Assembly (NCBI GenBank): GCA_044892505.1
Contig: CM097882.1
Location: 393,452,001-393,516,000, forward strand
Direction: 5' to 3'
From: Schmidtea nova
Lineage: Eukaryota
DNA: 64,000 nucleotides
Each line of letters opens with the position of its first letter. Position 1 is the stretch's first letter. Made by a program: the position numbers and the translations under genes. Shown here one piece after another: positions 3,020 through 64,000 of this stretch. The notes beneath the pieces are model-generated. The model saw only the letters and a program-made list of their open reading frames with translations, did no database searches and was not told the origin of the DNA.

Positions 3020-3025
3020 TTTATT
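3020..3025 (-). promoter_or_regulatory. Candidate polyadenylation signal (AATAAA) of the mucin-like gene
   Basis: tttatt at 3020-3025 lies 17 nt past the TGA at 3043-3045. The context is AT-rich, so a chance match is possible. Confidence 0.35.
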
Positions 3026-3042
3026 TATCAATCAAAATGTTT

Positions 3043-3279
3043 TCAGGGGTGTGAACAAGTGTTAATGCATGCACATTGAGTTATACGTACATCCACCATG
3101 AATCCCTTGACCAGCGTATTGGTTGATTGTTTGATGCATGTGTATTCATAAGGTAAATTAACAGTGTATTGACTTGGCGAGCAGCATTTACAGGCCGAAT
3201 TTTGCACGAATCCCGGTGGCAATGTTGTAGGGTCATTTAGGAGCATTGCTGAATATTTGTTGAATTTCATTATCGGATT
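3043..3279 (-). CDS. Terminal exon, second half of C-terminal cystine knot (CTCK)
   Basis: Acceptor ttatttag at 3280-3281, phase 0. Reads NPIMKF...SACKCCSP...ITQCACINTCSHP-TGA, with the CxCC and CxC knot motifs. Confidence 0.88.
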   Translation of the reverse strand, partial: NPIMKFNKYSAMLLNDPTTLPPGFVQNSACKCCSPSQYTVNLPYEYTCIKQSTNTLVKGFMVDVRITQCACINTCSHP

Positions 3280-42200: not shown

Positions 42201-45200
42201 GAACTAGCTGTTGATTGAGTTGATGTGAATGGAGTAGATATTATCGGGGAACTTGATAATGTGGATAATGTATAAGTTGGAGTAGTTCCAGATGTTGACG
42301 ACACCAATGATGATGTTGATGGTGTTGTTCCAGTTGTGAAGGTAACGGTAGGACTTGTTGTGGTATATCCTGAACTAGCTGTTGATTGAGTTGATGTGAA
42401 TGGAGTAGATATTATCGGGGAACTTGATAATGTGGATAATGTATAAGTTGGAGTAGTTCCAGATGTTGACGACACCAATGATGATGTTGATGGTGTTGTT
42501 CCAGTTGTGAAGGTAACGGTAGGACTTGTTGTGGTATATCCTGAACTAGCTGTTGATTGAGTTGATGTGAATGGAGTGGATATTTTCGGGGAACTTGATA
42601 ATGTGGATAATGTATAAGTTGGAGTAGTTCCAGATGTTGACGACACTAATGATGATGTTGATGGTGTTGTTCCAGTTGTAAAGGTAACGGTAGGACTTGT
42701 TGTGGTATATCCTGAACTAGCTGTTGATTGAGTTGATGTGATCGGAGTAGATACTATCGAGGTAATTGATGATGTTATAGTGATAGGAGTTGAAGGTTTC
42801 GTCGTTGTTCTTTTTGTTGTTGTTAACTTGGTTGTCGCAATATTTTCAGTTACTTCAGTTATAATGGTCGTAGATTCAGTTGTTTCTGTTCCTATTTATT
42901 TTTTTACTTATATCATATAATTAAAGATATTTACCTTTACAGCTCAATGGCTCATCAAGATTAGGGTTTTTACATTCTGCAATATTATCACAATTTTTCG
43001 CACAAATCATATTTCCCATAATATCTTCACAAAATGTTTCTTCTATCTCACAATACATTGTCGTTGTAAATTGATTTGTAATTTCAGTTGTTTTTGTTGT
43101 GTGTGAAATTGTCTTTTCAAACGTTGTTGTTATCGATGGTGTTGTAGTAACTTCCTTTGGAGTGAAACAACCAATAACTTCTATGCTGATAGCTATTGTT
43201 GGATTTGTTTCATTTCTGAAACCATATTGTGATTATGTGGTTTAATTAATGAAATTTTAAAATTATGGATATAAAAAGAGTTGTTTGACTCATTCCATAT
43301 TAGTTGCAATATAACAAAACTTACAAATTCGGAATTGTTGTAATGACGATTTCAATTTTGTCGATTTCAGTTCCTGGCTTTACTGTTGGTGAAGTCATTT
43401 TGTCCAATAACTTTGGAGACTCTTCTAAATCTCTACCCGTGAAAACTTGAGTCGATTTATCGCCATTATCCAATGTGACTGTCAAAACTACGACTTGAAC
43501 ATTTTCAGGCTTGTCAATGACAACATTGATCTCATTAACTGCAGGTGACTGTGTTTCTACATAAAATTTGGTTATAGAATACATGTTCCTAACAAGATGA
43601 TATTAGAATTTACCTTTTTTTGTTGGATTAATTTCGAATACGACTTGTGAACCCGTAACTGGTAAACCTTGGGTTGTTCCGAGTTTTTCACTTGATTCTG
43701 TAGGTTGTAAAGTGTTGTCAACAGTTACTTTGATATCAGATGGTGGAATTGTCTATAGAAATATAGTGAGGTTATTATTCATATTAATCATTTTAGTTTA
43801 TGTTACATTTTTGTCTGTCATTCCATCTTTAACGAGACAAGGTATTGGACTTGTAGTCGTTGTTGTTGGTGCTGTTGTTAGTGTTGGTGTTGTTGTTGCT
43901 GATGTTGTGGTGGCAGATGTCGTTGTTATCGATGGTGTAGTAGTAACTTCTTTTGGAGTGAAGCAACCAATAACTTCTATGCTGATAGCTATTGTTGGAT
44001 TTGTTTCATTTCTGAAACCATATTGTGATTATGTGGTTTAATTAATGAAATTTTAAAATTATGGATATAAAAAGAGTTGTTTGACTCATTCCATATTAGT
44101 TGCAATATAACAAAACTTACAAATTCGGAATTGTTGTAATGACGATTTCAATTTTGTCGATTTCAGTTCCTGGCTTTACTGTTGGTGAAGTCATTTTGTC
44201 CAATAACTTTGGAGACTCTTCTAAATCTCTACCCGTGAAAACTTGAGTCGATTTATCGCCATTATCCAATGTGACTGTCAAAACTACGACTTGAACATTT
44301 TCAGGCTTGTCAATGACAACATTGATCTCATTAACTGCAGGTGACTGTGTTTCTACATAAAATTTGGTTATAGAATACATGTTCCTAACAAGATGATATT
44401 AGAATTTACCTTTTTTTGTTGGATTAATTTCGAATACGACTTGTGAACCCGTAACTGGTAAACCTTGGGTTGTTCCGAGTTTTTCACTTGATTCTGTAGG
44501 TTGTAAAGTGTTGTCAACAGTTACTTTGATATCAGATGGTGGAATTGTCTATAGAAATATAGTGAGGTTATTATTCATATTAATCATTTTAGTTTATGTT
44601 ACATTTTTGTCTGTCATTCCATCTTTAACGAGACAAGGTATTGGACTTGTAGTCGTTGTTGTTGGTGCTGTTGTTAGTGTTGGTGTTGTTGTTGCTGATG
44701 TTGTGGTGGCAGATGTCGTTGTTATCGATGGTGTAGTAGTAACTTCTTTTGGAGTGAAGCAACCAATAACTTCTATGCTGATAGCTATTGTTGGATTTGT
44801 TTCATTTCTGAAACCATATTGTGATTATGTGGTTTAATTAATGAAATTTTAAAATTATGGATATAAAAAGAGTTGTTTGACTCATTCCATATTAGTTGCA
44901 ATATAACAAAACTTACAAATTCGGAATTGTTGTAATGACGATTTCAATTTTGTCGATTTCAGTTCCTGGCTTTACTGTTGGTGAAGTCATTTTGTCCAAT
45001 AACTTTGGAGACTCTTCTAAATCTCTACCCGTGAAAACTTGAGTCGATTTATCGCCATTATCCAATGTGACTGTCAAAACTACGACTTGAACATTTTCAG
45101 GCTTGTCAATGACAACATTGATCTCATTAACTGCAGGTGACTGTGTTTCTACATAAAATTTGGTTATAGAATACATGTTCCTAACAAGATGATATTAGAA

Positions 45201-48200
45201 TTTACCTTTTTTTGTTGGATTAATTTCGAATACGACTTGTGAACCCGTAACTGGTAAACCTTGGGTTGTTCCGAGTTTTTCACTTGATTCTGTAGGTTGT
45301 AAAGTGTTGTCAACAGTTACTTTGATATCAGATGGTGGAATTGTCTATAGAAATATAGTGAGGTTATTATTCATATTAATCATTTTAGTTTATGTTACAT
45401 TTTTGTCTGTCATTCCATCTTTAACGAGACAAGGTATTGGACTTGTAGTCGTTGTTGTTGGTGCTGTTGTTAGTGTTGGTGTTGTTGTTGCTGATGTTGT
45501 GGTGGCAGATGTCGTTGTTATCGATGGTGTAGTAGTAACTTCTTTTGGAGTGAAGCAACCAATAACTTCTATGCTGATAGCTATTGTTGGATTTGTTTCA
45601 TTTCTGAAACCATATTGTGATTATGTGGTTTAATTAATGAAATTTTAAAATTATGGATATAAAAAGAGTTGTTTGACTCATTCCATATTAGTTGCAATAT
45701 AACAAAACTTACAAATTCGGAATTGTTGTAATGACGATTTCAATTTTGTCGATTTCAGTTCCTGGCTTTACTGTTGGTGAAGTCATTTTGTCCAATAACT
45801 TTGGAGACTCTTCTAAATCTCTACCCGTGAAAACTTGAGTCGATTTATCGCCATTATCCAATGTGACTGTCAAAACTACGACTTGAACATTTTCAGGCTT
45901 GTCAATGACAACATTGATCTCATTAACTGCAGGTGACTGTGTTTCTACATAAAATTTGGTTATAGAATACATGTTCCTAACAAGATGATATTAGAATTTA
46001 CCTTTTTTTGTTGGATTAATTTCGAATACGACTTGTGAACCCGTAACTGGTAAACCTTGGGTTGTTCCGAGTTTTTCACTTGATTCTGTAGGTTGTAAAG
46101 TGTTGTCAACAGTTACTTTGATATCAGATGGTGGAATTGTCTATAGAAATATAGTGAGGTTATTATTCATATTAATCATTTTAGTTTATGTTACATTTTT
46201 GTCTGTCATTCCATCTTTAACGAGACAAGGTATTGGACTTGTAGTCGTTGTTGTTGGTGCTGTTGTTAGTGTTGGTGTTGTTGTTGCTGATGTTGTGGTG
46301 GCAGATGTCGTTGTTATCGATGGTGTAGTAGTAACTTCTTTTGGAGTGAAGCAACCAATAACTTCTATGCTGATAGCTATTGTTGGATTTGTTTCATTTC
46401 TGAAACCATATTGTGATTATGTGGTTTAATTAATGAAATTTTAAAATTATGGATATAAAAAGAGTTGTTTGACTCATTCCATATTAGTTGCAATATAACA
46501 AAACTTACAAATTCGGAATTGTTGTAATGACGATTTCAATTTTGTCGATTTCAGTTCCTGGCTTTACTGTTGGTGAAGTCATTTTGTCCAATAACTTTGG
46601 AGACTCTTCTAAATCTCTACCCGTGAAAACTTGAGTCGATTTATCGCCATTATCCAATGTGACTGTCAAAACTACGACTTGAACATTTTCAGGCTTGTCA
46701 ATGACAACATTGATCTCATTAACTGCAGGTGACTGTGTTTCTACATAAAATTTGGTTATAGAATACATGTTCCTAACAAGATGATATTAGAATTTACCTT
46801 TTTTTGTTGGATTAATTTCGAATACGACTTGTGAACCCGTAACTGGTAAACCTTGGGTTGTTCCGAGTTTTTCACTTGATTCTGTAGGTTGTAAAGTGTT
46901 GTCAACAGTTACTTTGATATCAGATGGTGGAATTGTCTATAGAAATATAGTGAGGTTATTATTCATATTAATCATTTTAGTTTATGTTACATTTTTGTCT
47001 GTCATTCCATCTTTAACGAGACAAGGTATTGGACTTGTAGTCGTTGTTGTTGGTGCTGTTGTTAGTGTTGGTGTTGTTGTTGCTGATGTTGTGGTGGCAG
47101 ATGTCGTTGTTATCGATGGTGTAGTAGTAACTTCTTTTGGAGTGAAGCAACCAATAACTTCTATGCTGATAGCTATTGTTGGATTTGTTTCATTTCTGAA
47201 ACCATATTGTGATTATGTGGTTTAATTAATGAAATTTTAAAATTATGGATATAAAAAGAGTTGTTTGACTCATTCCATATTAGTTGCAATATAACAAAAC
47301 TTACAAATTCGGAATTGTTGTAATGACGATTTCAATTTTGTCGATTTCAGTTCCTGGCTTTACTGTTGGTGAAGTCATTTTGTCCAATAACTTTGGAGAC
47401 TCTTCTAAATCTCTACCCGTGAAAACTTGAGTCGATTTATCGCCATTATCCAATGTGACTGTCAAAACTACGACTTGAACATTTTCAGTCTTGTCAATGA
47501 CAACATTGATCTCATTAACTGCAGGTGACTGTGTTTCTACATAAAATTTGGTTATAGAATACATGTTCCTAACAAGATGATATTAGAATTTACCTTTTTT
47601 TGTTGGATTAATTTCGAATACGACTTGTGAACCCGTAACTGGTAAACCTTGGGTTGTTCCGAGTTTTTCACTTGATTCTGTAGGTTGTAAAGTGTTGTCA
47701 ACAGTTACTTTGATATCAGATGGTGGAATTGTCTATAGAAATATAGTGAGGTTATTATTCATATTAATCATTTTAGTTTATGTTACATTTTTGTCTGTCA
47801 TTCCATCTTTAACGAGACAAGGTATTGGACTTGTAGTCGTTGTTGTTGGTGCTGTTGTTAGTGTTGGTGTTGTTGTTGCTGATGTTGTGGTGGCAGATGT
47901 CGTTGTTATCGATGGTGTAGTAGTAACTTCTTTTGGAGTGAAGCAACCAATAACTTCTATGCTGATAGCTATTGTTGGATTTGTTTCATTTCTGAAACCA
48001 TATTGTGATTATGTGGTTTAATTAATGAAATTTTAAAATTATGGATATAAAAAGAGTTGTTTGACTCATTCCATATTAGTTGCAATATAACAAAACTTAC
48101 AAATTCGGAATTGTTGTAATGACGATTTCAATTTTGTCGATTTCAGTTCCTGGCTTTACTGTTGGTGAAGTCATTTTGTCCAATAACTTTGGAGACTCTT

Positions 48201-51200
48201 CTAAATCTCTACCCGTGAAAACTTGAGTCGATTTATCGCCATTATCCAATGTGACTGTCAAAACTACGACTTGAACATTTTCAGTCTTGTCAATGACAAC
48301 ATTGATCTCATTAACTGCAGGTGACTGTGTTTCTACATAAAATTTGGTTATAGAATACATGTTCCTAACAAGATGATATTAGAATTTACCTTTTTTTGTT
48401 GGATTAATTTCGAATACGACTTGTGAACCCGTAACTGGTAAACCTTGGGTTGTTCCGAGTTTTTCACTTGATTCTGTAGGTTGTAAAGTGTTGTCAACAG
48501 TTACTTTGATATCAGATGGTGGAATTGTCTATAGAAATATAGTGAGGTTATTATTCATATTAATCATTTTAGTTTATGTTACATTTTTGTCTGTCATTCC
48601 ATCTTTAACGAGACAAGGTATTGGACTTGTAGTCGTTGTTGTTGGTGCTGTTGTTAGTGTTGGTGTTGTTGTTGCTGATGTTGTGGTGGCAGATGTCGTT
48701 GTTATCGATGGTGTAGTAGTAACTTCTTTTGGAGTGAAGCAACCAATAACTTCTATGCTGATAGCTATTGTTGGATTTGTTTCATTTCTGAAACCATATT
48801 GTGATTATGTGGTTTAATTAATGAAATTTTAAAATTATGGATATAAAAAGAGTTGTTTGACTCATTCCATATTAGTTGCAATATAACAAAACTTACAAAT
48901 TCGGAATTGTTGTAATGACGATTTCAATTTTGTCGATTTCAGTTCCTGGCTTTACTGTTGGTGAAGTCATTTTGTCCAATAACTTTGGAGACTCTTCTAA
49001 ATCTCTACCCGTGAAAACTTGAGTCGATTTATCGCCATTATCCAATGTGACTGTCAAAACTACGACTTGAACATTTTCAGTCTTGTCAATGACAACATTG
49101 ATCTCATTAACTGCAGGTGACTGTGTTTCTACATAAAACTTGGTTATAGAATACATGTTCCTAACAAGATGATATTAGAATTTACCTTTTTTTGTTGGAT
49201 TAATTTCGAATACGACTTGTGAACCCGTAACTGGTAAACCTTGGGTCGTTCCGAGTTTTTCACTTGATTCTGTAGGTTGTAAAGTGTTGTCAACAGTTAC
49301 TTTGATATCAGATGGTGGAATTGTCTATAGAAATATAGTGAGGTTATTATTCATATTAATCATTTTAGTTTATGTTACATTTTTGTCTGTCATTCCATCT
49401 TTAACGAGACAAGGTATTGGACTTGTAGTCGTTGTTGTTGGTGCTGTTGTTAGTGTTGGTGTTGTTGTTGCTGATGTTGTGGTGGCAGATGTCGTTGTTA
49501 TCGATGGTGTAGTAGTAACTTCTTTTGGAGTGAAGCAACCAATAACTTCTATGCTGATAGCTATTGTTGGATTTGTTTCATTTCTGAAACCATATTGTGA
49601 TTATGTGGTTTAATTAATGAAATTTTAAAATTATGGATATAAAAAGAGTTGTTTGACTCATTCCATATTAGTTGCAATATAACAAAACTTACAAATTCGG
49701 AATTGTTGTAATGACGATTTCAATTTTGTCGATTTCAGTTCCTGGCTTTACTGTTGGTGAAGTCATTTTGTCCAATAACTTTGGAGACTCTTCTAAATCT
49801 CTACCCGTGAAAACTTGAGTCGATTTATCGCCATTATCCAATGTGACTGTCAAAACTACGACTTGAACATTTTCAGTCTTGTCAATGACAACATTGATCT
49901 CATTAACTGCAGGTGACTGTGTTTCTACATAAAACTTGGTTATAGAATACATGTTCCTAACAAGATGATATTAGAATTTACCTTTTTTTGTTGGATTAAT
50001 TTCGAATACGACTTGTGAACCCGTAACTGGTAAACCTTGGGTCGTTCCGAGTTTTTCACTTGATTCTGTAGGTTGTAAAGTGTTGTCAACAGTTACTTTG
50101 ATATCAGATGGTGGAATTGTCTATAGAAATATAGTGAGGTTATTATTCATATTAATCATTTTAGTTTATGTTACATTTTTGTCTGTCATTCCATCTTTAA
50201 CGAGACAAGGTATTGGACTTGTAGTCGTTGTTGTTGGTGCTGTTGTTAGTGTTGGTGTTGTTGTTGCTGATGTTGTGGTGGCAGATGTCGTTGTTATCGA
50301 TGGTGTAGTAGTAACTTCTTTTGGAGTGAAGCAACCAATAACTTCTATGCTGATAGCTATTGTTGGATTTGTTTCATTTCTGAAACCATATTGTGATTAT
50401 GTGGTTTAATTAATGAAATTTTAAAATTATGGATATAAAAAGAGTTGTTTGACTCATTCCATATTAGTTGCAATATAACAAAACTTACAAATTCGGAATT
50501 GTTGTAATGACGATTTCAATTTTGTCGATTTCAGTTCCTGGCTTTACTGTTGGTGAAGTCATTTTGTCCAATAACTTTGGAGACTCTTCTAAATCTCTAC
50601 CCGTGAAAACTTGAGTCGATTTATCGCCATTATCCAATGTGACTGTCAAAACTACGACTTGAACATTTTCAGGCTTGTCAATGACAACATTGATCTCATT
50701 AACTGCAGGTGACTGTGTTTCTACATAAAATTTGGTTATAGAATACATGTTCCTAACAAGATGATATTAGAATTTACCTTTTTTTGTTGGATTAATTTCG
50801 AATACGACTTGTGAACCCGTAAATGGTAAACCTTGGGTTGTTCCGAGTTTTTCACTTGATTCTGTAGGTTGTAAAGTGTTGTCAACAGTTACTTTGATAT
50901 CAGATGGTGGAATTGTCTATAGAAATATAGTGAGGTTATTATTCATATTAATCATTTTAGTTTATGTTACATTTTTGTCTGTCATTCCATCTTTAACGAG
51001 ACAAGGTATTGGACTTGTAGTCGTTGTTGTTGGTGCTGTTGTTAGTGTTGGTGTTGTTGTTGCTGATGTTGTGGTGGCAGATGTCGTTGTTATCGATGGT
51101 GTAGTAGTAACTTCTTTTGGAGTGAAGCAACCAATAACTTCTATGCTGATAGCTATTGTTGGATTTGTTTCATTTCTGAAACCATATTGTGATTATGTGG

Positions 51201-54200: not shown

Positions 54201-57200
54201 GTAGTCGTTGTTGTTGGTGCTGTTGTTAGTGTTGGTGTTGTTGTTGCTGATGTTGTGGTGGCAGATGTCGTTGTTATCGATGGTGTAGTAGTAACTTCTT
54301 TTGGAGTGAAGCAACCAATAACTTCTATGCTGATAGCTATTGTTGGATTTGTTTCATTTCTGAAACCATATTGTGATTATGTGGTTTAATTAATGAAATT
54401 TTAAAATTATGGATATAAAAAGAGTTGTTTGACTCATTCCATATTAGTTGCAATATAACAAAACTTACAAATTCGGAATTGTTGTAATGACGATTTCAAT
54501 TTTGTCGATTTCAGTTCCTGGCTTTACTGTTGGTGAAGTCATTTTGTCCAATAACTTTGGAGACTCTTCTAAATCTCTACCCGTGAAAACTTGAGTCGAT
54601 TTATCGCCATTATCCAATGTGACTGTCAAAACTACGACTTGAACATTTTCAGGCTTGTCAATGACAACATTGATCTCATTAACTGCAGGTGACTGTGTTT
54701 CTACATAAAATTTGGTTATAGAATACATGTTCCTAACAAGATGATATTAGAATTTACCTTTTTTTGTTGGATTAATTTCGAATACGACTTGTGAACCCGT
54801 AACTGGTAAACCTTGGGTTGTTCCGAGTTTTTCACTTGATTCTGTAGGTTGTAAAGTGTTGTCGACAGTTACTTTGATATCAGATGGTGGAATTGTCTAT
54901 AGAAATATAGTGAGGTTATTATTCATATTAATCATTTTAGTTTATGTTACATTTTTGTCTGTCATTCCATCTGTAACGAGACAAGGTATTGGACTTGTAG
55001 TCGTTGTTGTTGGTGCTGTTGTTAGTGTTGGTGTTGTTGTTGCTGATGTTGTGGTGGCAGATGTCGTTGTTATCGATGGTGTAGTAGTAACTTCTTTTGG
55101 AGTGAAGCAACCAATAACTTCTATGCTGATAGCTATTGTTGGATTTGTTTCATTTCTGAAACCATATTGTGATTATGTGGTTTAATTAATGAAATTTTAA
55201 AATTATGGATATAAAAAGAGTTGTTTGACTCATTCCATATTAGTTGCAATATAACAAAACTTACAAATTCGGAATTGTTGTAATGACGATTTCAATTTTG
55301 TCGATTTCAGTTCCTGGCTTTACTGTTGGTGAAGTCATTTTGTCCAATAACTTTGGAGACTCTTCTAAATCTCTACCCATGAAAACTTGAGTCGATTTAT
55401 CGCCATTATCCAATGTGACTGTCAAAACTACGACTTGAACATTTTCAGGCTTGTCAATGACAACATTGATCTCATTAACTGCAGGTGACTGTGTTTCTAC
55501 ATAAAATTTGGTTATAGAATACATGTTCCTAACAAGATGATATTAGAATTTACCTTTTTTTGTTGGATTAATTTCGAATACGACTTGTGAACCCGTAACT
55601 GGTAAACCTTGGGTTGTTCCGAGTTTTTCACTTGATTCTGTAGGTTGTAAAGTGTTGTCGACAGTTACTTTGATATCAGATGGTGGAATTGTCTATAGAA
55701 ATATAGTGAGGTTATTATTCATATTAATCATTTTAGTTTATGTTACATTTTTGTCTGTCATTCCATCTTTAACGAGACAAGGTATTGGACTTGTAGTCGT
55801 TGTTGTTGGTGCTGTTGTTAGTGTTGGTGTTGTTGTTGCTGATGTTGTGGTGGCAGATGTCGTTGTTATCGATGGTGTAGTAGTAACTTCTTTTGGAGTG
55901 AAGCAACCAATAACTTCTATGCTGATAGCTATTGTTGGATTTGTTTCATTTCTGAAACCATATTGTGATTATGTGGTTTAATTAATGAAATTTTAAAATT
56001 ATGGATATAAAAAGAGTTGTTTGACTCATTCCATATTAGTTGCAATATAACAAAACTTACAAATTCGGAATTGTTGTAATGACGATTTCAATTTTGTCGA
56101 TTTCAGTTCCTGGCTTTACTGTTGGTGAAGTCATTTTGTCCAATAACTTTGGAGACTCTTCTAAATCTCTACCCGTGAAAACTTGAGTCGATTTATCGCC
56201 ATTATCCAATGTGACTGTCAAAACTACGACTTGAACATTTTCAGGCTTGTCAATGACAACATTGATCTCATTAACTGCAGGTGACTGTGTTTCTACATAA
56301 AATTTGGTTATAGAATACATGTTCCTAACAAGATGATATGAGAATTTACCTTTTTTTGTTGGATTAATTTCGAATACGACTTGTGAACCCGTAACTGGTA
56401 AACCTTGGGTTGTTCCGAGTTTTTCACTTGATTCTGTAGGTTGTAAAGTGTTGTCAACAGTTACTTTGATATCAGATGGTGGAATTGTCTATAGAAATAT
56501 AGTGAGGTTATTATTCATATTAATCATTTTAGTTTATGTTACATTTTTGTCTGTCATTCCATCTTTAACGAGACAAGGTATTGGACTTGTAGTCGTTGTT
56601 GTTGGTGCTGTTGTTAGTGTTGGTGTTGTTGTTGCTGATGTTGTGGTGGCAGATGTCGTTGTTATCGATGGTGTAGTAGTAACTTCTTTTGGAGTGAAGC
56701 AACCAATAACTTCTATGCTGATAGCTATTGTTGGATTTGTTTCATTTCTGAAACCATATTGTGATTATGTGGTTTAATTAATGAAATTTTAAAATTATGG
56801 ATATAAAAAGAGTTGTTTGACTCATTCCATATTAGTTGCAATATAACAAAACTTACAAATTCGGAATTGTTGTAATGACGATTTCAATTTTGTCGATTTC
56901 AGTTCCTGGCTTTACTGTTGGTGAAGTCATTTTGTCCAATAACTTTGGAGACTCTTCTAAATCTCTACCCGTGAAAACTTGAGTCGATTTATCGCCATTA
57001 TCCAATGTGACTGTCAAAACTACGACTTGAACATTTTCAGGCTTGTCAATGACAACATTGATCTCATTAACTGCAGGTGACTGTGTTTCTACATAAAATT
57101 TGGTTATAGAATACATGTTCCTAACAAGATGATATTAGAATTTACCTTTTTTTGTTGGATTAATTTCGAATACGACTTGTGAACCCGTAACTGGTAAACC

Positions 57201-60200
57201 TTGGGTCGTTCCGAGTTTTTCACTTGATTCTGTAGGTTGTAAAGTGTTGTCGACAGTTACTTTGATATCAGATGGTGGAATTGTCTATAGAAATATAGTG
57301 AGGTTATTATTCATATTAATCATTTTAGTTTATGTTACATTTTTGTCTGTCATTCCATCTTTAACGAGACAAGGTATTGGACTTGTAGTCGTTGTTGTTG
57401 GTGCTGTTGTTAGTGTTGGTGTTGTTGTTGCTGATGTTGTGGTGGCAGATGTCGTTGTTATCGATGGTGTAGTAGTAACTTCTTTTGGAGTGAAGCAACC
57501 AATAACTTCTATGCTGATAGCTATTGTTGGATTTGTTTCATTTCTGAAACCATATTGTGATTATGTGGTTTAATTAATGAAATTTTAAAATTATGGATAT
57601 AAAAAGAGTTGTTTGACTCATTCCATATTAGTTGCAATATAACAAAACTTACAAATTCGGAATTGTTGTAATGACGATTTCAATTTTGTCGATTTCAGTT
57701 CCTGGCTTTACTGTTGGTGAAGTCATTTTGTCCAATAACTTTGGAGACTCTTCTAAATCTCTACCCGTGAAAACTTGAGTCGATTTATCGCCATTATCCA
57801 ATGTGACTGTCAAAACTACGACTTGAACATTTTCAGGCTTGTCAATGACAACATTGATCTCATTAACTGCAGGTGACTGTGTTTCTACATAAAATTTGGT
57901 TATAGAATACATGTTCCTAACAAGATGATATTAGAATTTACCTTTTTTTGTTGGATTAATTTCGAATACGACTTGTGAACCCGTAACTGGTAAACCTTGG
58001 GTTGTTCCGAGTTTTTCACTTGATTCTGTAGGTTGTAAAGTGTTGTCAACAGTTACTTTGATATCAGATGGTGGAATTGTCTATAGAAATATAGTGAGGT
58101 TATTATTCATATTAATCATTTTAGTTTATGTTACATTTTTGTCTGTCATTCCATCTTTAACGAGACAAGGTATTGGACTTGTAGTCGTTGTTGTTGGTGC
58201 TGTTGTTAGTGTTGGTGTTGTTGTTGCTGATGTTGTGGTGGCAGATGTCGTTGTTATCGATGGTGTAGTAGTAACTTCTTTTGGAGTGAAGCAACCAATA
58301 ACTTCTATGCTGATAGCTATTGTTGGATTTGTTTCATTTCTGAAACCATATTGTGATTATGTGGTTTAATTAATGAAATTTTAAAATTATGGATATAAAA
58401 AGAGTTGTTTGACTCATTCCATATTAGTTGCAATATAACAAAACTTACAAATTCGGAATTGTTGTAATGACGATTTCAATTTTGTCGATTTCAGTTCCTG
58501 GCTTTACTGTTGGTGAAGTCATTTTGTCCAATAACTTTGGAGACTCTTCTAAATCTCTACCCGTGAAAACTTGAGTCGATTTATCGCCATTATCCAATGT
58601 GACTGTCAAAACTACGACTTGAACATTTTCAGGCTTGTCAATGACAACATTGATCTCATTAACTGCAGGTGACTGTGTTTCTACATAAAATTTGGTTATA
58701 GAATACATGTTCCTAACAAGATGATATTAGAATTTACCTTTTTTTGTTGGATTAATTTCGAATACGACTTGTGAACCCGTAACTGGTAAACCTTGGGTTG
58801 TTCCGAGTTTTTCACTTGATTCTGTAGGTTGTAAAGTGTTGTCAACAGTTACTTTGATATCAGATGGTGGAATTGTCTATAGAAATATAGTGAGGTTATT
58901 ATTCATATTAATCATTTTAGTTTATGTTACATTTTTGTCTGTCATTCCATCTTTAACGAGACAAGGTATTGGACTTGTAGTCGTTGTTGTTGGTGCTGTT
59001 GTTAGTGTTGGTGTTGTTGTTGCTGATGTTGTGGTGGCAGATGTCGTTGTTATCGATGGTGTAGTAGTAACTTCTTTTGGAGTGAAGCAACCAATAACTT
59101 CTATGCTGATAGCTATTGTTGGATTTGTTTCATTTCTGAAACCATATTGTGATTATGTGGTTTAATTAATGAAATTTTAAAATTATGGATATAAAAAGAG
59201 TTGTTTGACTCATTCCATATTAGTTGCAATATAACAAAACTTACAAATTCGGAATTGTTGTAATGACGATTTCAATTTTGTCGATTTCAGTTCCTGGCTT
59301 TACTGTTGGTGAAGTCATTTTGTCCAATAACTTTGGAGACTCTTCTAAATCTCTACCCGTGAAAACTTGAGTCGATTTATCGCCATTATCCAATGTGACT
59401 GTCAAAACTACGACTTGAACATTTTCAGGCTTGTCAATGACAACATTGATCTCATTAACTGCAGGTGACTGTGTTTCTACATAAAATTTGGTTATAGAAT
59501 ACATGTTCCTAACAAGATGATATTAGAATTTACCTTTTTTTGTTGGATTAATTTCGAATACGACTTGTGAACCCGTAACTGGTAAACCTTGGGTCGTTCC
59601 GAGTTTTTCACTTGATTCTGTAGGTTGTAAAGTGTTGTCGACAGTTACTTTGATATCAGATGGTGGAATTGTCTATAGAAATATAGTGAGGTTATTATTC
59701 ATATTAATCATTTTAGTTTATGTTACATTTTTGTCTGTCATTCCATCTTTAACGAGACAAGGTATTGGACTTGTAGTCGTTGTTGTTGGTGCTGTTGTTA
59801 GTGTTGGTGTTGTTGTTGCTGATGTTGTGGTGGCAGATGTCGTTGTTATCGATGGTGTAGTAGTAACTTCTTTTGGAGTGAAGCAACCAATAACTTCTAT
59901 GCTGATAGCTATTGTTGGATTTGTTTCATTTCTGAAACCATATTGTGATTATGTGGTTTAATTAATGAAATTTTAAAATTATGGATATAAAAAGAGTTGT
60001 TTGACTCATTCCATATTAGTTGCAATATAACAAAACTTACAAATTCGGAATTGTTGTAATGACGATTTCAATTTTGTCGATTTCAGTTCCTGGCTTTACT
60101 GTTGGTGAAGTCATTTTGTCCAATAACTTTGGAGACTCTTCTAAATCTCTACCCGTGAAAACTTGAGTCGATTTATCGCCATTATCCAATGTGACTGTCA

Positions 60201-63200
60201 AAACTACGACTTGAACATTTTCAGGCTTGTCAATGACAACATTGATCTCATTAACTGCAGGTGACTGTGTTTCTACATAAAATTTGGTTATAGAATACAT
60301 GTTCCTAACAAGATGATATTAGAATTTACCTTTTTTTGTTGGATTAATTTCGAATACGACTTGTGAACCCGTAACTGGTAAACCTTGGGTTGTTCCGAGT
60401 TTTTCACTTGATTCTGTAGGTTGTAAAGTGTTGTCAACAGTTACTTTGATATCAGATGGTGGAATTGTCTATAGAAATATAGTGAGGTTATTATTCATAT
60501 TAATCATTTTAGTTTATGTTACATTTTTGTCTGTCATTCCATCTTTAACGAGACAAGGTATTGGACTTGTAGTCGTTGTTGTTGGTGCTGTTGTTAGTGT
60601 TGGTGTTGTTGTTGCTGATGTTGTGGTGGCAGATGTCGTTGTTATCGATGGTGTAGTAGTAACTTCTTTTGGAGTGAAGCAACCAATAACTTCTATGCTG
60701 ATAGCTATTGTTGGATTTGTTTCATTTCTGAAACCATATTGTGATTATGTGGTTTAATTAATGAAATTTTAAAATTATGGATATAAAAAGAGTTGTTTGA
60801 CTCATTCCATATTAGTTGCAATATAACAAAACTTACAAATTCGGAATTGTTGTAATGACGATTTCAATTTTGTCGATTTCAGTTCCTGGCTTTACTGTTG
60901 GTGAAGTCATTTTGTCCAATAACTTTGGAGACTCTTCTAAATCTCTACCCGTGAAAACTTGAGTCGATTTATCGCCATTATCCAATGTGACTGTCAAAAC
61001 TACGACTTGAACATTTTCAGGCTTGTCAATGACAACATTGATCTCATTAACTGCAGGTGACTGTGTTTCTACATAAAATTTGGTTATAGAATACATGTTC
61101 CTAACAAGATGATATTAGAATTTACCTTTTTTTGTTGGATTAATTTCGAATACGACTTGTGAACCCGTAACTGGTAAACCTTGGGTTGTTCCGAGTTTTT
61201 CACTTGATTCTGTAGGTTGTAAAGTGTTGTCAACAGTTACTTTGATATCAGATGGTGGAATTGTCTATAGAAATATAGTGAGGTTATTATTCATATTAAT
61301 CATTTTAGTTTATGTTACATTTTTGTCTGTCATTCCATCTTTAACGAGACAAGGTATTGGACTTGTAGTCGTTGTTGTTGGTGCTGTTGTTAGTGTTGGT
61401 GTTGTTGTTGCTGATGTTGTGGTGGCAGATGTCGTTGTTATCGATGGTGTAGTAGTAACTTCTTTTGGAGTGAAGCAACCAATAACTTCTATGCTGATAG
61501 CTATTGTTGGATTTGTTTCATTTCTGAAACCATATTGTGATTATGTGGTTTAATTAATGAAATTTTAAAATTATGGATATAAAAAGAGTTGTTTGACTCA
61601 TTCCATATTAGTTGCAATATAACAAAACTTACAAATTCGGAATTGTTGTAATGACGATTTCAATTTTGTCGATTTCAGTTCCTGGCTTTACTGTTGGTGA
61701 AGTCATTTTGTCCAATAACTTTGGAGACTCTTCTAAATCTCTACCCGTGAAAACTTGAGTCGATTTATCGCCATTATCCAATGTGACTGTCAAAACTACG
61801 ACTTGAACATTTTCAGGCTTGTCAATGACAACATTGATCTCATTAACTGCAGGTGACTGTGTTTCTACATAAAATTTGGTTATAGAATACATGTTCCTAA
61901 CAAGATGATATTAGAATTTACCTTTTTTTGTTGGATTAATTTCGAATACGACTTGTGAACCCGTAACTGGTAAACCTTGGGTCGTTCCGAGTTTTTCACT
62001 TGATTCTGTAGGTTGTAAAGTGTTGTCGACAGTTACTTTGATATCAGATGGTGGAATTGTCTATAGAAATATAGTGAGGTTATTATTCATATTAATCATT
62101 TTAGTTTATGTTACATTTTTGTCTGTCATTCCATCTTTAACGAGACAAGGTATTGGACTTGTAGTCGTTGTTGTTGGTGCTGTTGTTAGTGTTGGTGTTG
62201 TTGTTGCTGATGTTGTGGTGGCAGATGTCGTTGTTATCGATGGTGTAGTAGTAACTTCTTTTGGAGTGAAGCAACCAATAACTTCTATGCTGATAGCTAT
62301 TGTTGGATTTGTTTCATTTCTGAAACCATATTGTGATTATGTGGTTTAATTAATGAAATTTTAAAATTATGGATATAAAAAGAGTTGTTTGACTCATTCC
62401 ATATTAGTTGCAATATAACAAAACTTACAAATTCGGAATTGTTGTAATGACGATTTCAATTTTGTCGATTTCAGTTCCTGGCTTTACTGTTGGTGAAGTC
62501 ATTTTGTCCAATAACTTTGGAGACTCTTCTAAATCTCTACCCGTGAAAACTTGAGTCGATTTATCGCCATTATCCAATGTGACTGTCAAAACTACGACTT
62601 GAACATTTTCAGGCTTGTCAATGACAACATTGATCTCATTAACTGCAGGTGACTGTGTTTCTACATAAAATTTGGTTATAGAATACATGTTCCTAACAAG
62701 ATGATATTAGAATTTACCTTTTTTTGTTGGATTAATTTCGAATACGACTTGTGAACCCGTAACTGGTAAACCTTGGGTTGTTCCGAGTTTTTCACTTGAT
62801 TCTGTAGGTTGTAAAGTGTTGTCAACAGTTACTTTGATATCAGATGGTGGAATTGTCTATAGAAATATAGTGAGGTTATTATTCATATTAATCATTTTAG
62901 TTTATGTTACATTTTTGTCTGTCATTCCATCTTTAACGAGACAAGGTATTGGACTTGTAGTCGTTGTTGTTGGTGCTGTTGTTAGTGTTGGTGTTGTTGT
63001 TGCTGATGTTGTGGTGGCAGATGTCGTTGTTATCGATGGTGTAGTAGTAACTTCTTTTGGAGTGAAGCAACCAATAACTTCTATGCTGATAGCTATTGTT
63101 GGATTTGTTTCATTTCTGAAACCATATTGTGATTATGTGGTTTAATTAATGAAATTTTAAAATTATGGATATAAAAAGAATTGTTTGACTCATTCCATAT

Positions 63201-63911
63201 TAGTTGCAATATAACAAAACTTACAAATTCGGAATTGTTGTAATGACGATTTCAATTTTGTCGATTTCAGTTCCTGGCTTTACTGTTGGTGAAGTCATTT
63301 TGTCCAATAACTTTGGAGACTCTTCTAAATCTCTACCCGTGAAAACTTGAGTCGATTTATCGCCATTATCCAATGTGACTGTCAAAACTACGACTTGAAC
63401 ATTTTCAGGCTTGTCAATGACAACATTGATCTCATTAACTGCAGGTGACTGTGTTTCTACATAAAATTTGGTTATAGAATACATGTTCCTAACAAGATGA
63501 TATTAGAATTTACCTTTTTTTGTTGGATTAATTTCGAATACGACTTGTGAACCCGTAACTGGTAAACCTTGGGTCGTTCCGAGTTTTTCACTTGATTCTG
63601 TAGGTTGTAAAGTGTTGTCAACAGTTACTTTGATATCAGATGGTGGAATTGTCTATAGAAATATAGTGAGGTTATTATTCATATTAATCATTTTAGTTTA
63701 TGTTACATTTTTGTCTGTCATTCCATCTTTAACGAGACAAGGTATTGGACTTGTAGTCGTTGTTGTTGGTGCTGTTGTTAGTGTTGGTGTTGTTGTTGCT
63801 GATGTTGTGGTGGCAGATGTCGTTGTTATCGATGGTGTAGTAGTAACTTCTTTTGGAGTGAAGCAACCAATAACTTCTATGCTGATAGCTATTGTTGGAT
63901 TTGTTTCATTT
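3043..63911 (-). CDS. Giant multi-exon gel-forming-mucin / SCO-spondin-like secreted protein (3' part; 5' end beyond window), about 13,800 aa in window
   Basis: GT-AG exons were traced manually with compatible phases from 63911 to the stop at 3043, except across the N gap. Content: PTS repeats, a 151-aa two-Cys domain x39, LDLa-like, TSP1, TIL, VWC-like modules and a cystine knot. Summed exon length is about 41.4 kb including the 275 N. Confidence 0.85.
3328..3666 (-). CDS. Exon: VWC-like module end and first half of cystine knot
   Basis: Acceptor tttttttcag at 3667-3668; donor GTATGG at 3327; phases 0/0. Reads NGQTKKDTNSCQLYLC...HCCY...CKVNT...TICGGGC (CxGxC knot motif). Confidence 0.85.
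4335..5029 (-). CDS. Exon(s) spanning the N gap: VWC end, TSP1, TIL, VWC start
   Basis: Acceptor tctttag at 5030-5031, phase 2: (C)TCRQGKWIC...DCQWSDWKIVSPCNVTCGKGVQILERT. After the gap: CEQTCDD...CEEGCRCQPGFVRNINNTCVPSSEC. Donor CAG/GTTAGT at 4334. Internal structure is unknown across the Ns. Confidence 0.7.
4577..4851. other. Assembly gap (275 N) inside coding region
   Basis: Run of N from 4577 to 4851. Confidence 1.
5085..5349 (-). CDS. Exon: TIL domain plus VWC-like start
   Basis: Acceptor ttgcatag; donor TG/GTAAAA; phases 1/2. Reads CVAPKQLLSCVNPCEQRCGDLSKRCTNIDCIESCACPDNMLEQDGQCVSKSEC. Confidence 0.88.
5415..5600 (-). CDS. Exon: atypical TSP1-like module
   Basis: Acceptor ttaatcag; donor A/GTAAAA; phases 1/1. 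Reads DCKVLTYETSEC...CDTSCGHGMVTKT...GGKNCEVVYEPCYLGNC. Confidence 0.82.
5653..5830 (-). CDS. Exon: TSP1-like module
   Basis: Acceptor acaag; donor G/GTAGAG; phases 0/1. Reads VNCVMGQWINETTCNAQCC...ITQVRD...CETNRTIPCQMECP. Confidence 0.82.
5881..6041 (-). CDS. Exon: TSP1 repeat
   Basis: Acceptor caataag; donor CAA/GTATAA; phases 1/0. Reads ATWNEWSAWSICSGNCPNGTRSRDRIC...CVGPRIETEPC. Confidence 0.88.
6092..6150 (-). CDS. Small exon (59 nt), end of VWC-like module
   Basis: Acceptor caatctag; donor A/GTAATA; phases 2/1, matching both neighbours. Reads (C)FCNFTGQRECQPSNEDNKP. Confidence 0.78.
6278..6574 (-). CDS. Exon: Cys module end, TSP1 repeat, VWC-like start
   Basis: Acceptor tttttag; donor TG/GTGAGT; phases 2/2. 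Reads ETGVCENGQAVC...CSWNQWQDWSPCNKVCGASNQTRIR...GQSCIGTDSDVKPC. The listed ORF 6366-6584 is the wrong frame. Confidence 0.88.
7168..7421 (+). mobile_element. Probable Helitron 3'-end relic (helicase C-terminus fragment plus CTAG end) within an intron
   Basis: 7168-7284 translates to SRVASQVKVLIESNPQQGNLLNDQRQFTRNVVFQDVLQ*, resembling the Helitron RepHel C-terminus (SRV...VKV...QG.L....FT.NVV..E/D.L*). A GC-rich cgggcgcCTAG followed by T lies at 7411-7422. Confidence 0.55.
7910..8126 (-). CDS. Exon: TIL domain
   Basis: Acceptor cttaag; donor TG/GTTAGT; phases 1/2. Reads CSGNKIQIACHNVTCPRTCDD...CITGCFCKPGYVEDMLGNCVLSDTC. Confidence 0.88.
8177..8512 (-). CDS. Exon: two TSP1 repeats
   Basis: Acceptor tttcttag; donor A/GTACGT; phases 1/1. 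Reads DCQWSRWSEWSECSGGC...KIRSR and CEWSPWSHWTECSQNCGGGTTNKTR. Confidence 0.9.
9480..10315 (-). CDS. Exon: end of last two-Cys domain, 2 PTS repeats, TSP1, VWC-like module
   Basis: Acceptor atatttag at 10316-10317, phase 2; donor A/GTAAGT at 9479. Reads DLTKPTISFGLEVIGC...CSEWSDWSLCNVSCGNGFTVRSRNC...CAKCLCKIGNLEC. Confidence 0.9.
10997..12320 (-). CDS. Array-1 unit: exons 11474-12320 (4 PTS repeats), 11288-11426, 10997-11228
   Basis: GT-AG introns of 47, 59 and 681 bp; phases 0, 1, 2. Encodes ...CKIENGMSDTN/KIPPSDITVT...NPTQK/GTQSPAVNEIN...ITTILSL. Confidence 0.9.
13002..14496 (-). CDS. Array-1 unit: exons 13479-14496 (5 repeats), 13293-13431, 13002-13233
   Basis: Same splice sites and phases as the 10997 unit; 349-aa ORF fragment. 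Confidence 0.88.
15178..17527 (-). CDS. Array-1 unit: exons 15655-17527 (10 repeats), 15469-15607, 15178-15409
   Basis: Same splice sites; 634-aa ORF fragment. Confidence 0.88.
18209..19874 (-). CDS. Array-1 unit: exons 18686-19874 (6 repeats), 18500-18638, 18209-18440
   Basis: Same splice sites; 406-aa ORF fragment. Confidence 0.88.
20556..22221 (-). CDS. Array-1 unit: exons 21033-22221 (6 repeats), 20847-20985, 20556-20787
   Basis: Same splice sites; 406-aa ORF fragment. Confidence 0.88.
22903..24910 (-). CDS. Array-1 unit: exons 23380-24910 (8 repeats), 23194-23332, 22903-23134
   Basis: Same splice sites; 520-aa ORF fragment. Confidence 0.88.
25592..28283 (-). CDS. Array-1 unit: exons 26069-28283 (12 repeats), 25883-26021, 25592-25823
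   Basis: Same splice sites; 748-aa ORF fragment. Confidence 0.88.
28965..30972 (-). CDS. Array-1 unit: exons 29442-30972 (8 repeats), 29256-29394, 28965-29196
   Basis: Same splice sites; 520-aa ORF fragment. Confidence 0.88.
31654..33661 (-). CDS. Array-1 unit: exons 32131-33661 (8 repeats), 31945-32083, 31654-31885
   Basis: Same splice sites; 520-aa ORF fragment. Confidence 0.88.
34343..35495 (-). CDS. Array-1 unit: exons 34820-35495 (3 repeats), 34634-34772, 34343-34574
   Basis: Same splice sites; 235-aa ORF fragment. Confidence 0.88.
36177..38013 (-). CDS. Array-1 unit: exons 36654-38013 (7 repeats), 36468-36606, 36177-36408
   Basis: Same splice sites; 463-aa ORF fragment. Confidence 0.88.
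38695..40702 (-). CDS. Array-1 unit: exons 39172-40702 (8 repeats), 38986-39124, 38695-38926
   Basis: Same splice sites; 520-aa ORF fragment. Confidence 0.88.
41384..42891 (-). CDS. First array-1 unit: exons 41861-42891 (unique Thr-rich lead plus 4 full repeats), 41675-41813, 41384-41615
   Basis: Acceptor aataaatag at 42892-42893, phase 1. Reads TETTESTTIITEVTENIATTKLTTTKRTTTKPSTP..., in frame with ORF 41849-42646. Confidence 0.85.
42935..43215 (-). CDS. Junction exon: end of array-2 domain, Thr-rich stretch, LDLa-like six-Cys module
   Basis: Acceptor ggtttcag, phase 2; donor G/GTAAAT, phase 1; 43-bp intron to the next exon. Reads NETNPTIAISIEVIGC...YCEIEETFCEDIMGNMICAKNCDNIAECKNPNLDEPLSCK. 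This exon is missing from the ORF track. Confidence 0.82.
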
Positions 63912-64000
63912 CTGAAACCATATTGTGATTATGTGGTTTAATTAATGAAATTTTAAAATTATGGATATAAAAAGAGTTGTTTGACTCATTCCATATTAGT
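43126..64000. repeat. Array 2: 26 tandem copies of a 796-bp three-exon/three-intron unit (continues past window end)
   Basis: ORF fragments recur at exactly 43321+796k (k=0..25). Only scattered substitutions and no indels were seen. Confidence 0.98.
43325..63911 (-). CDS. Array-2 exons: A 43807-44011 (205 nt), B 43614-43752 (139 nt), C 43325-43556 (232 nt), each +796k; 192 aa per unit
   Basis: Introns of 54 bp (GTAACA..TAG), 57 bp (GTAAAT..TAG) and 109 bp (GTAAGT..CAG); phases 0, 1, 2; 576 coding + 220 intronic = 796 bp. Unit: NETNPTIAISIEVIGCFTPKEVTTTPSITTTSATTTSATTTPTLTTAPTTTTTSPIPCLVKDGMTDKN/TIPPSDIKVTVDNTLQPTESSEKLGTTQGLPVTGSQVVFEINPTKK/ETQSPAVNEINVVIDKPENVQVVVLTVTLDNGDKSTQVFTGRDLEESPKLLDKMTSPTVKPGTEIDKIEIVITTIPNL. 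Confidence 0.9.

What the first reader, a model, noticed from the sequence alone, without database searches (positions are those of the whole stretch)
43126..64000. A 796-bp satellite that is actually a spliced protein-coding array
Seen: 26 or more copies with no indel, each with three exons and three intact GT-AG introns. The differences I noted are a handful of substitutions (e.g. P>T in four consecutive units at 47301-50484, T>M at 55380, intronic changes at 49138, 49934, 56340 and 63180). A repeat masker would treat it as satellite DNA. Inference: very recent amplification or ongoing gene conversion adding about 5,000 aa. Correct splicing must pick among 26 identical sets of sites.
Basis: partly seen in the sequence, partly recalled or inferred. 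Interest (0 to 1): 0.7.

Follow-up and report, generated by a model that had tools for sequence, protein, structure and literature searches.

The report
Spliced repeat array in giant adhesive-mucin gene
The 796-base "satellite" is 27 near-identical three-exon cassettes inside one giant secreted mucus or adhesive-type gene of a probable flatworm; this way of building a gene is already known, and no RNA data were available to confirm splicing.

Summary
A 796-bp tandem array runs from window 43126 to about 540 bases past the window end. It holds 27 cassettes with no indels and 0.22% mean pairwise difference.

On the minus strand each cassette has three open exons (205, 139 and 232 nt, 192 codons) and three GT-AG introns (54, 57 and 109 nt).

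The coding reading is supported by evolution. An older sister array of 13 units (9841-42889) has exons B and C of the same length and phase. Protein identity is 57-59% and dN/dS is about 0.25, while the introns are no more alike than shuffled sequence.

The arrays form the core of one gene of about 73 kb: three VWD assemblies, LDLa modules, array 1, array 2, then TSP1 and TIL modules and a cystine-knot-like end. This is the layout published for flatworm adhesion protein 2 and resembles SCO-spondin.

Contigs of four DNA runs hold the unit as a closed 796-bp circle at about 18-36 times the flank depth.

No RNA run was on offer, so splicing is inferred. The bead domain matches no family; "discoidin-like" is only a lead.

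The scan found similar arrays before in another gene of this genome. This is a new member of a known kind.

The parts
43126..64000 (-). Type-1 array: 796-bp cassette, 26 full units plus 179 nt in the window. It continues about 540 nt past the window end, making 27 cassettes in all.
44603..44807 (-). Exon A of a typical cassette (205 nt). It holds the last strand of the previous bead ending in ...EVIGC, a Thr-rich linker of about 40 aa, and the start of the next bead (PCLVKDGM...).
44549..44602 (-). Intron 1 (54 nt, GT-AG, phase 0)
44410..44548 (-). Exon B (139 nt)
44353..44409 (-). Intron 2 (57 nt, GT-AG, phase 1)
44121..44352 (-). Exon C (232 nt)
44012..44120 (-). Intron 3 (109 nt, GT-AG, phase 2), the cassette-to-cassette intron
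42935..43215 (-). Junction exon. It carries the end of the last type-1 bead, a short linker, and a small six-Cys module (weak LNR match, LDLa-like spacing). It keeps the frame into array 2.
   Evidence: frame read from the sequence
9841..42889 (-). Type-2 array: 13 units. Each is a 1286-bp core holding the same bead, with exons B and C of the same length and phase, plus 2.4 to 12.2 copies of a 171-bp (57-aa) Ser/Thr-rich repeat. The cores differ by 7 nt or fewer.
41384..41813 (-). Example type-2 bead: exon B2 at 41675-41813, intron 2 at 41616-41674, exon C2 at 41384-41615. Its intron 3 (40703-41383) is 681 nt, against 109 nt in type 1.
9469..10335 (-). Last type-2 linker exon, running into the first TSP1 module and a Cys-rich piece
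5084..8531 (-). 3' module exons: TSP1 x2 (8151-8531), TIL (7810-8127), TSP1 (6277-6594), TSP1 (5878-6042), weak TSP1 (5600-5851), TIL (5084-5371)
3046..3690 (-). Two last Cys-rich exons with cystine-knot-like spacing. The stop codon is at 3043-3045. Pfam is silent on the separate pieces.
4577..4851 (.). Run of N inside the 3' part of the gene (gap or masked). It was left as it is.

Best explanation
The array is the first of two repeat cores of one giant secreted glycoprotein gene on the minus strand, about 73 kb and roughly 15,000 codons. Each 796-bp cassette encodes a bead of about 150 aa plus a Thr-rich linker of about 40 aa that is presumably O-glycosylated. The bead is beta-rich and has two Cys, one at each end. 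It is split by three short introns in phases 0, 1 and 2.

The cassette was amplified to 27 copies by unequal crossing-over or gene conversion at the DNA level, so the introns are as identical as the exons.

The pre-mRNA would be spliced by ordinary nearest-neighbour pairing across short introns. Any like-to-like skipping between cassettes stays in frame.

The protein is inferred to polymerise through its N-terminal VWD-C8-TIL assemblies and its cystine-knot-like C-terminus. It would then form a beads-on-a-string mucus or adhesive fibre. It is most like flatworm adhesion protein 2, the surface-binding glue protein.

Shown: the array, intact exons and splice sites, long-term purifying selection on the bead, the flanking domains, and tens of copies in independent DNA runs. 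Inferred: transcription and splicing, glycosylation, polymerisation, and an adhesive or mucus role.
For: Array and integrity.

Coding constraint: between type 1 and type 2, exons B and C have identical lengths and phases. Protein identity is 57-59%. dN/dS is 0.24-0.27 and dS is about 1.1-1.3. Third codon positions change about twice as often as the others. Exon alignment scores lie 28-42 sd above shuffles, while all three introns lie within -0.7 to 0.6 sd.

Frame continuity into the flanking exons was read from the sequence.

Flanking Pfam domains above cut-off are VWD x3, C8, TIL, LDLa x4, TSP1 x5 and TIL x2 more. A signal-peptide-like first exon lies at L002:1888-2031.

DNA-level homogenisation: variant density is similar in exons (6 sites in 576 nt) and introns (3 in 220 nt). 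Units 10-12 equal units 13-15, and units 18-20 equal units 21-23, with 24-25 continuing the pattern.

Four DNA runs carry a circular 796-bp unitig at 17.5-36 times flank depth, and a contig bridges the unique flank into unit 1.

The published ap2 layout is vWD/C8/TIL/LDL, then two repeat motifs (21 x 255 aa and 25 x 221 aa), then TIL/TSP-1, 14,794 aa in all, and glycosylated (PMC6410801, PMC8621496). Tmed-ap2 also has two repeat regions and a TSP/TIL end (PMC9229212).
Against: No RNA evidence. The one run search (kind 'any') listed only DNA holders, and the laid contigs show no spliced joint.

At 0.2% divergence, the intactness of the 27 copies says little about present selection on them.

The bead has no detectable relatives. 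Pfam is silent on the exon pieces. phmmer of exon C against 1.84 billion representatives gave only two spurious repeat hits. So homology to ap2 repeats is not shown.

The flatworm identity of the genome rests on earlier notes that I did not test.

The genome has other bead-and-linker mucin genes, so this one need not be the ap2 counterpart.
Confidence: 0.82

Rival explanations
1. The array is real DNA and was once coding, but it is now silent or is skipped. The mature protein would then lack most or all of the 27 cassettes, for example by splicing from the LDLa exons directly into array 2.
For: No RNA data were obtainable. All like-phase skips stay in frame, as read from the phases, so a shorter product is possible. 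Within the array, nonsynonymous to synonymous variant sites stand at 4:2, which shows no visible constraint.
Against: Every one of the 81 introns keeps GT-AG, and every exon is open. Exons B and C have kept their length and phase, with dN/dS of about 0.25 against the sister array. Published ap2 proteins do contain both repeat cores (PMC6410801).
Confidence: 0.08
2. The copy number or the uniformity is an assembly artefact, with the array over-expanded or polished to uniformity.
For: Near-identical 796-bp repeats are hard to assemble. The depth ratios differ between runs (17.5 to 36), and the tool warns that contig depth is not a copy number.
Against: Four independent runs close the unit into a 796-bp circle at depth far above the flank. 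The assembled units carry structured private variants and block patterns, which polishing to uniformity would erase. One run shows a depth-split bubble at the assembled T/C site at unit position 550.
Confidence: 0.06
3. It is a non-coding satellite whose open frames and GT-AG pairs are accidental.
For: It is AT-rich, strictly periodic and has no database relatives.
Against: Selective conservation of the exon pieces only, excess change at third codon positions, exons B and C of identical length and phase in a sister array diverged to dS above 1, and in-frame junctions to Pfam-supported exons on both sides.
Confidence: 0.01

Closest known systems
Flatworm adhesion protein 2 (Mlig-ap2, Mpoz-ap2, Tmed-ap2, Mile-ap2)
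   Same: The order of parts is the same: VWD/C8/TIL, then 1-5 LDLa, then two successive repeat motifs that make up most of the protein, then TIL and TSP1 modules. The size is similar, about 15,000 aa against 14,794. The core is predicted to be O-glycosylated (PMC6410801, PMC8621496, PMC9229212).
   Different: No sequence similarity of the repeat unit was shown. [quoted passage not shown] Here each 192-aa repeat is split into three exons with homogenised introns, whereas Minona ap2 has an exon of at least 15 kb. Here there are three D assemblies and a cystine-knot-like end. Expression and function are untested.
SCO-spondin (SSPO)
   Same: Giant secreted protein with three VWD-TIL assemblies, an LDLa cluster, TSP1 and TIL modules and a C-terminal cystine knot. 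Vertebrate SSPO has one FA5/8C domain (PMC8487547).
   Different: SSPO has about 27 TSRs and no mucin core. Here there are 5-6 TSRs and 40 bead-plus-linker units. An EMI domain was not shown, the CTCK was not confirmed by Pfam, and the bead does not match PF00754.
Human LPA kringle IV type 2 coding VNTR
   Same: A tandem unit that contains whole exons plus introns is repeated tens of times in frame with near-identical copies. [quoted passage not shown]
   Different: The unit here is 796 bp with three exons, and the bead-plus-linker is unrelated to kringles. Copy-number polymorphism is only hinted at by the depth ratios.
Gel-forming mucins with CysD domains between PTS stretches (MUC2, MUC5AC, MUC5B), from my own knowledge
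   Same: N-terminal D assemblies, C-terminal cystine knot, and small globular domains that interrupt O-glycosylated linkers.
   Different: In those mucins the PTS repeats lie in one giant exon, and CysD is a different Cys-rich fold. Here the bead has only two Cys and each unit is spliced.

Membership tests
Flatworm adhesion protein 2 (ap2) | N-terminal VWD, C8 and TIL domains followed by LDLa domains | tested here: met
   Pfam hits above cut-off on upstream exons: VWD x3, C8, TIL, LDLa x4 and one weaker
Flatworm adhesion protein 2 (ap2) | Core made of two successive, different, highly repetitive motifs | tested here: met
   27 x 192 aa, then 13 x (bead plus n x 57 aa)
Flatworm adhesion protein 2 (ap2) | C-terminal TIL domains interspersed with TSP-1 domains | tested here: met
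Flatworm adhesion protein 2 (ap2) | Sequence homology to a published ap2 | tested here: inconclusive
   No ap2 sequence was at hand. phmmer of exon C against 1.84 billion representatives found no true relative.
Flatworm adhesion protein 2 (ap2) | Expression in adhesive gland cells and loss of adhesion on RNAi | not testable with these tools
   No RNA run was on offer. This needs bench work.
SCO-spondin | EMI domain at the N-terminus | tested here: inconclusive
   Only an EGF-like exon (L002:1322-1447) and a weak TB-like piece lie upstream of the first VWD
SCO-spondin | Three VWD-TIL assemblies, an LDLa cluster, TSRs with TIL, and a C-terminal cystine knot | tested here: inconclusive
   VWD, TIL, LDLa and TSP1 are met. 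The cystine knot was read from Cys spacing only, and Pfam is silent. There are far fewer TSRs than in SSPO.
F5/8 type C (discoidin) domain, PF00754 | Match to the Pfam model | tested here: not met
   No hit on the exon pieces at E up to 10. A whole-genome six-frame scan with PF00754 at E up to 1 does not list this locus.
F5/8 type C (discoidin) domain, PF00754 | Profile similarity to bona fide members | tested here: not met
   hhalign of the exon B, exon C and C-terminal strand alignments against nine PF00754 domains of this genome scored no better than reversed controls
F5/8 type C (discoidin) domain, PF00754 | One Cys at each end of a beta-rich module of about 150 aa | tested here: met
   There are exactly two Cys per unit, at PCLVKDGM and EVIGC. 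This feature is not specific.
F5/8 type C (discoidin) domain, PF00754 | Jelly-roll fold | not testable with these tools
   The bead is split over four exon pieces. The joined sequence was not handed to any tool, so no model was made. The language-model feature search of exon C put F5_F8_type_C and CBM32 clusters first at 0.89 with 138 shared features, which is a lead only. Exon B gave nothing.
Multi-exon coding VNTR (LPA KIV-2 kind) | Tandem unit holds whole exons and introns, with coding length a multiple of 3 and all copies open | tested here: met
Multi-exon coding VNTR (LPA KIV-2 kind) | Copy number varies between individuals | tested here: inconclusive
   Unit-to-flank depth ratios of 17.5, 20, 22 and 26-36 in four samples. 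Contig depth is a poor measure.

The most novel reading that the evidence does not exclude
This gene is the so far undescribed planarian (triclad) counterpart of the flatworm glue protein ap2. Its surface-binding core would be built from a new lectin-like bead fold, and its length would be tuned between individuals by gain and loss of whole spliced cassettes.
Probability: 0.3. Interest if true: 0.55.

Novelty: new member of a known kind. Interest (0 to 1): 0.4.

Why it matters
It shows that a stretch a repeat masker would discard is about a third of a giant gene of roughly 15,000 codons. It also gives a fully resolved genomic picture of a two-core adhesive or mucin gene. The flatworm adhesion papers say such genes cannot be assembled from short reads. 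If the ap2 link holds, it offers a candidate glue gene for planarians, a group not yet covered in that literature. It would also be a clean natural case of concerted evolution acting separately on two sister exon-intron arrays. As a mechanism it is not new: multi-exon coding VNTRs such as LPA KIV-2 are well known, and this scan has already met similar arrays in another gene of the same genome.

Tried and rejected
- Pfam on the three exon pieces gave nothing. The only weak hits were low-complexity matches and SAC9_GBDL at E 0.11.
- phmmer of exon C against 1.84 billion representatives gave two spurious repeat proteins.
- The PDB sequence search of exon C found nothing.
- The language-model feature search put F5_F8_type_C-like clusters first for exon C at a sub-threshold score and gave nothing for exon B.
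- The PF00754 scan of the whole genome does not hit the locus.
- hhalign against this genome's own PF00754 domains scored no better than reversed controls.
- tblastn of my exons against the similar bead-mucin gene 3.7 Mb away showed no similarity.
- Global alignment identities of the short introns were rejected as meaningless and replaced by a shuffle test.
- I did not fold a single exon fragment, because a 76-aa piece of a beta-sandwich with a two-sequence alignment would give an unreliable model.
- I did not run the search for homologous proteins, because the exhaustive representative search over the same collection was already blank.
- The joined (spliced) protein was not built for, or sent to, any search or folding tool. 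All searches were made exon by exon, by reference.
Full report
**1. The observation**

Tandem Repeats Finder cannot report a period of 796, but every internal feature recurs at 796-bp steps. A direct lag-796 comparison gives 99.4-100% identity from window 43126 to the window end, against about 30% elsewhere.

Cutting the stretch into 796-bp units gives 26 full units plus 179 nt. There are no indels, and each unit has 0-3 substitutions against the consensus.

I fetched the next 60 kb of the chromosome. The array stops about 540 nt beyond the window. The 27th unit is identical to the consensus up to unit position 705.

A protein search of the whole 1.25-Gb assembly with exon C finds exactly 27 copies of this type and 13 of a second type. 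All are at this locus and all are open.

**2. Anatomy**

The gene is on the minus strand. A typical cassette is:

| Feature | Coordinates | Length |
|---|---|---|
| Exon A | 44807..44603 | 205 nt |
| Intron 1 | 44602..44549 | 54 nt |
| Exon B | 44548..44410 | 139 nt |
| Intron 2 | 44409..44353 | 57 nt |
| Exon C | 44352..44121 | 232 nt |
| Intron 3 | 44120..44012 | 109 nt |

The coding sum is 576 nt, or 192 codons. The intron phases are 0, 1 and 2.

All 27 cassettes have open exon pieces and GT..AG at each intron.

The translations show a bead of about 150 aa. It begins at PCLVKDGM at the end of exon A, runs through exons B and C, and ends at ...ISIEVIGC at the start of the next exon A. A Thr-rich linker of about 40 aa follows. 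There are exactly two Cys per unit, one at each end of the bead.

**3.

The full set is as follows:
- P>T in four units
- V>F in two units
- K>T in two units
- T>M in one unit
- a synonymous Thr change in six units
- a synonymous Val change in six units
- three intronic sites, one of them in two units

**4. Is it coding?**

The strongest evidence is the sister array at 9841-42889. It has 13 units. Each is a 1286-bp core plus 2.4 to 12.2 copies of a 171-bp (57-aa) Ser/Thr-rich repeat.

Its bead has exons B and C of exactly the same lengths (139 and 232 nt) and the same phases. Between the two arrays:
- Protein identity is 57-59%.
- dS is about 1.1-1.3 and dN/dS is 0.24-0.27.
- Third codon positions change about twice as often as first or second positions.
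- Exon alignment scores lie 28-42 sd above shuffles.
- All three introns lie within -0.7 to 0.6 sd of shuffles. Intron 3 is 109 nt in one array and 681 nt in the other.

So the exon pieces, and only they, have been kept by selection on a protein.

The frame runs unbroken from an upstream LDLa-type exon into the first cassette. It also runs from the last cassette through a junction exon (42935-43215) into the 57-aa repeats. I read this from the sequence.

**5. The gene around it**

Upstream on the minus strand, in L001 and L002, lie:
- a signal-peptide-like first exon
- an EGF-like exon
- three VWD domains with C8 and TIL
- four LDLa modules above the Pfam cut-off, plus one weaker

Downstream, at window 10335 to 3046, lie:
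- at least five TSP1 modules
- two or three TIL domains
- two final Cys-rich exons with cystine-knot-like spacing, which Pfam does not confirm on the separate pieces

A run of N at 4577-4851 lies in this part and was left alone.

The gene spans about 73 kb. By my rough sum of exon lengths it has about 15,000 codons. Of these, 5,184 come from the type-1 array and about 7,600 from the type-2 region.

**6. How the array arose**

Within the type-1 array the mean pairwise difference is 0.22%. Variant sites are as dense in introns (3 in 220 nt) as in exons (6 in 576 nt). The exonic sites are 4 nonsynonymous to 2 synonymous. The uniformity therefore comes from a DNA-level process, not from selection.

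The variants also form higher-order blocks. Units 10-12 carry the same pattern as units 13-15. Units 18-20 equal units 21-23, and 24-25 continue the pattern. Units 6-7 and 8-9 form pairs. This is what out-of-register unequal exchange of one to three units would leave.

The type-2 cores are equally uniform, with 7 or fewer differences in 1286 nt and no indels. The two arrays are homogenised separately and do not exchange with each other. That is classic concerted evolution.

**7. Independent DNA support**

All are kept as contigs and none is on record as RNA. Laid on window 42776-43921:
- Each run closes the unit into a circle ('goes back 796').
- A contig bridges the unique flank into unit 1, with its private substitutions.
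- Contig depth on the unit is 17.5, 20, 22 and 26-36 times that of the flank.

The tool warns that contig depth is not a copy number. I take this only as 'tens of copies, the same order as the 27 assembled, possibly variable'. No spliced joint appears, as expected for DNA.

**8. Splicing**

Splicing was not observed. The introns are 54-109 nt, so pairing across each short intron during transcription is enough.

Because every cassette has the same phases, any donor joined to the same kind of acceptor in a later cassette removes whole 192-codon units and rebuilds a normal bead. Array 2 has the same phases, so even cross-array skips stay in frame. This follows from the coordinates. Whether such skipping occurs is unknown.

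**9. What the bead is**

No family could be assigned.
- Pfam is silent on the exon pieces.
- phmmer of exon C against 1.84 billion representatives gave two spurious repeat proteins.
- The PDB sequence search is blank.
- A language-model feature search of exon C put F5_F8_type_C, galactose-binding and CBM32 clusters first. The score was 0.89 with 138 shared features, which the tool itself rates as a lead only. Exon B gave nothing.
- A whole-genome scan with PF00754 does not list this locus.
- hhalign of my exon alignments against nine true PF00754 domains from this genome is no better than reversed controls.

The terminal Cys pair, the 'C....GM.....IP' start and the 'EVIGC' end recall discoidin domains. 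That is a resemblance from memory, not a test.

Because the bead is split over four exon pieces, the joined sequence was not given to any search or folding tool. No structure model was made.

**10. Comparison with what is known**

The closest match in layout is flatworm adhesion protein 2. Mlig-ap2 is 14,794 aa. It has vWD, C8, TIL and LDL domains at the N-terminus, a core of 21 x 255 aa followed by 25 x 221 aa, and TIL and TSP-1 domains at the C-terminus. It is glycosylated and is needed for attachment (PMC6410801, PMC8621496). Tmed-ap2 also has two repeat regions and a TSP/TIL end (PMC9229212).

The order of parts here is the same. Sequence homology and expression are untested, and those authors note that this protein is poorly conserved between flatworm groups.

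The domain set also resembles SCO-spondin (PMC8487547).

As a genetic structure, the closest analogue is the human LPA KIV-2 coding VNTR, with 5.6 kb per unit and 1-40 units per allele (PMC11462820).

**11. Earlier notes of this scan**

Earlier notes call the genome a planarian (Schmidtea nova). I did not test that. They also report another giant mucin gene 3.7 Mb away with two homogenised exon-intron arrays and 'discoidin-like' beads.

I fetched that locus. It does have 1726-bp two-exon cassettes ending in a '...GC' strand plus a Thr/Ser linker. It has no BLAST similarity to my exons. So this kind of array is recurrent in this genome.

**12. Verdict**

The coding reading is strongly supported by evolutionary evidence but not yet by RNA. 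The structure is a new member of a known kind, and interest is moderate.

Noticed in passing
window 9841-42889: The 171-bp (57-aa) Ser/Thr repeats nested in the 13 type-2 units vary from 2.4 to 12.2 copies. Nearly all counts end in .2, so expansion and contraction happen in whole repeats within a fixed frame. This is a second, nested level of length variation.
   Followed up: partly
window 50290-55065 and 56658-63821: Higher-order structure in the type-1 array: three-unit blocks (2,388 bp) recur with the same variant pattern. Units 10-12 equal units 13-15, and units 18-20 equal units 21-23, with 24-25 continuing.
   Followed up: yes
L002:8121-10000 and L003:1-1042 (minus strand), about 18-21 kb beyond the window end: Two long open frames (619 and 354 aa) have family-B DNA polymerase-like motifs, including ...GDTDS... 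They probably belong to a large DNA transposon of the protein-primed polymerase kind, upstream of the mucin gene.
   Followed up: no
L007-L013 (G000:C1:397234001-397300000): Another giant bead-and-linker gene has 1726-bp two-exon cassettes in two sub-arrays. It has the same design logic but no detectable sequence similarity to this gene's bead.
   Followed up: partly
window 42936-43058: A single small six-Cys module sits exactly between the two arrays. It has a weak LNR match (E 0.046) and LDLa-like spacing.
   Followed up: partly
G000:C1:457.00-457.21 Mb and C2:402.95-403.15 Mb: Two clusters of single-exon, secreted-looking F5_F8_type_C (fucolectin-like) genes turned up in the PF00754 scan.
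   Followed up: no
L001:2290-2400 and L002:2319-2552, 3000-3216: Long (TA)n, (ATT)n-like and (TA)n microsatellites lie in introns or upstream sequence of the gene's 5' part.
   Followed up: no
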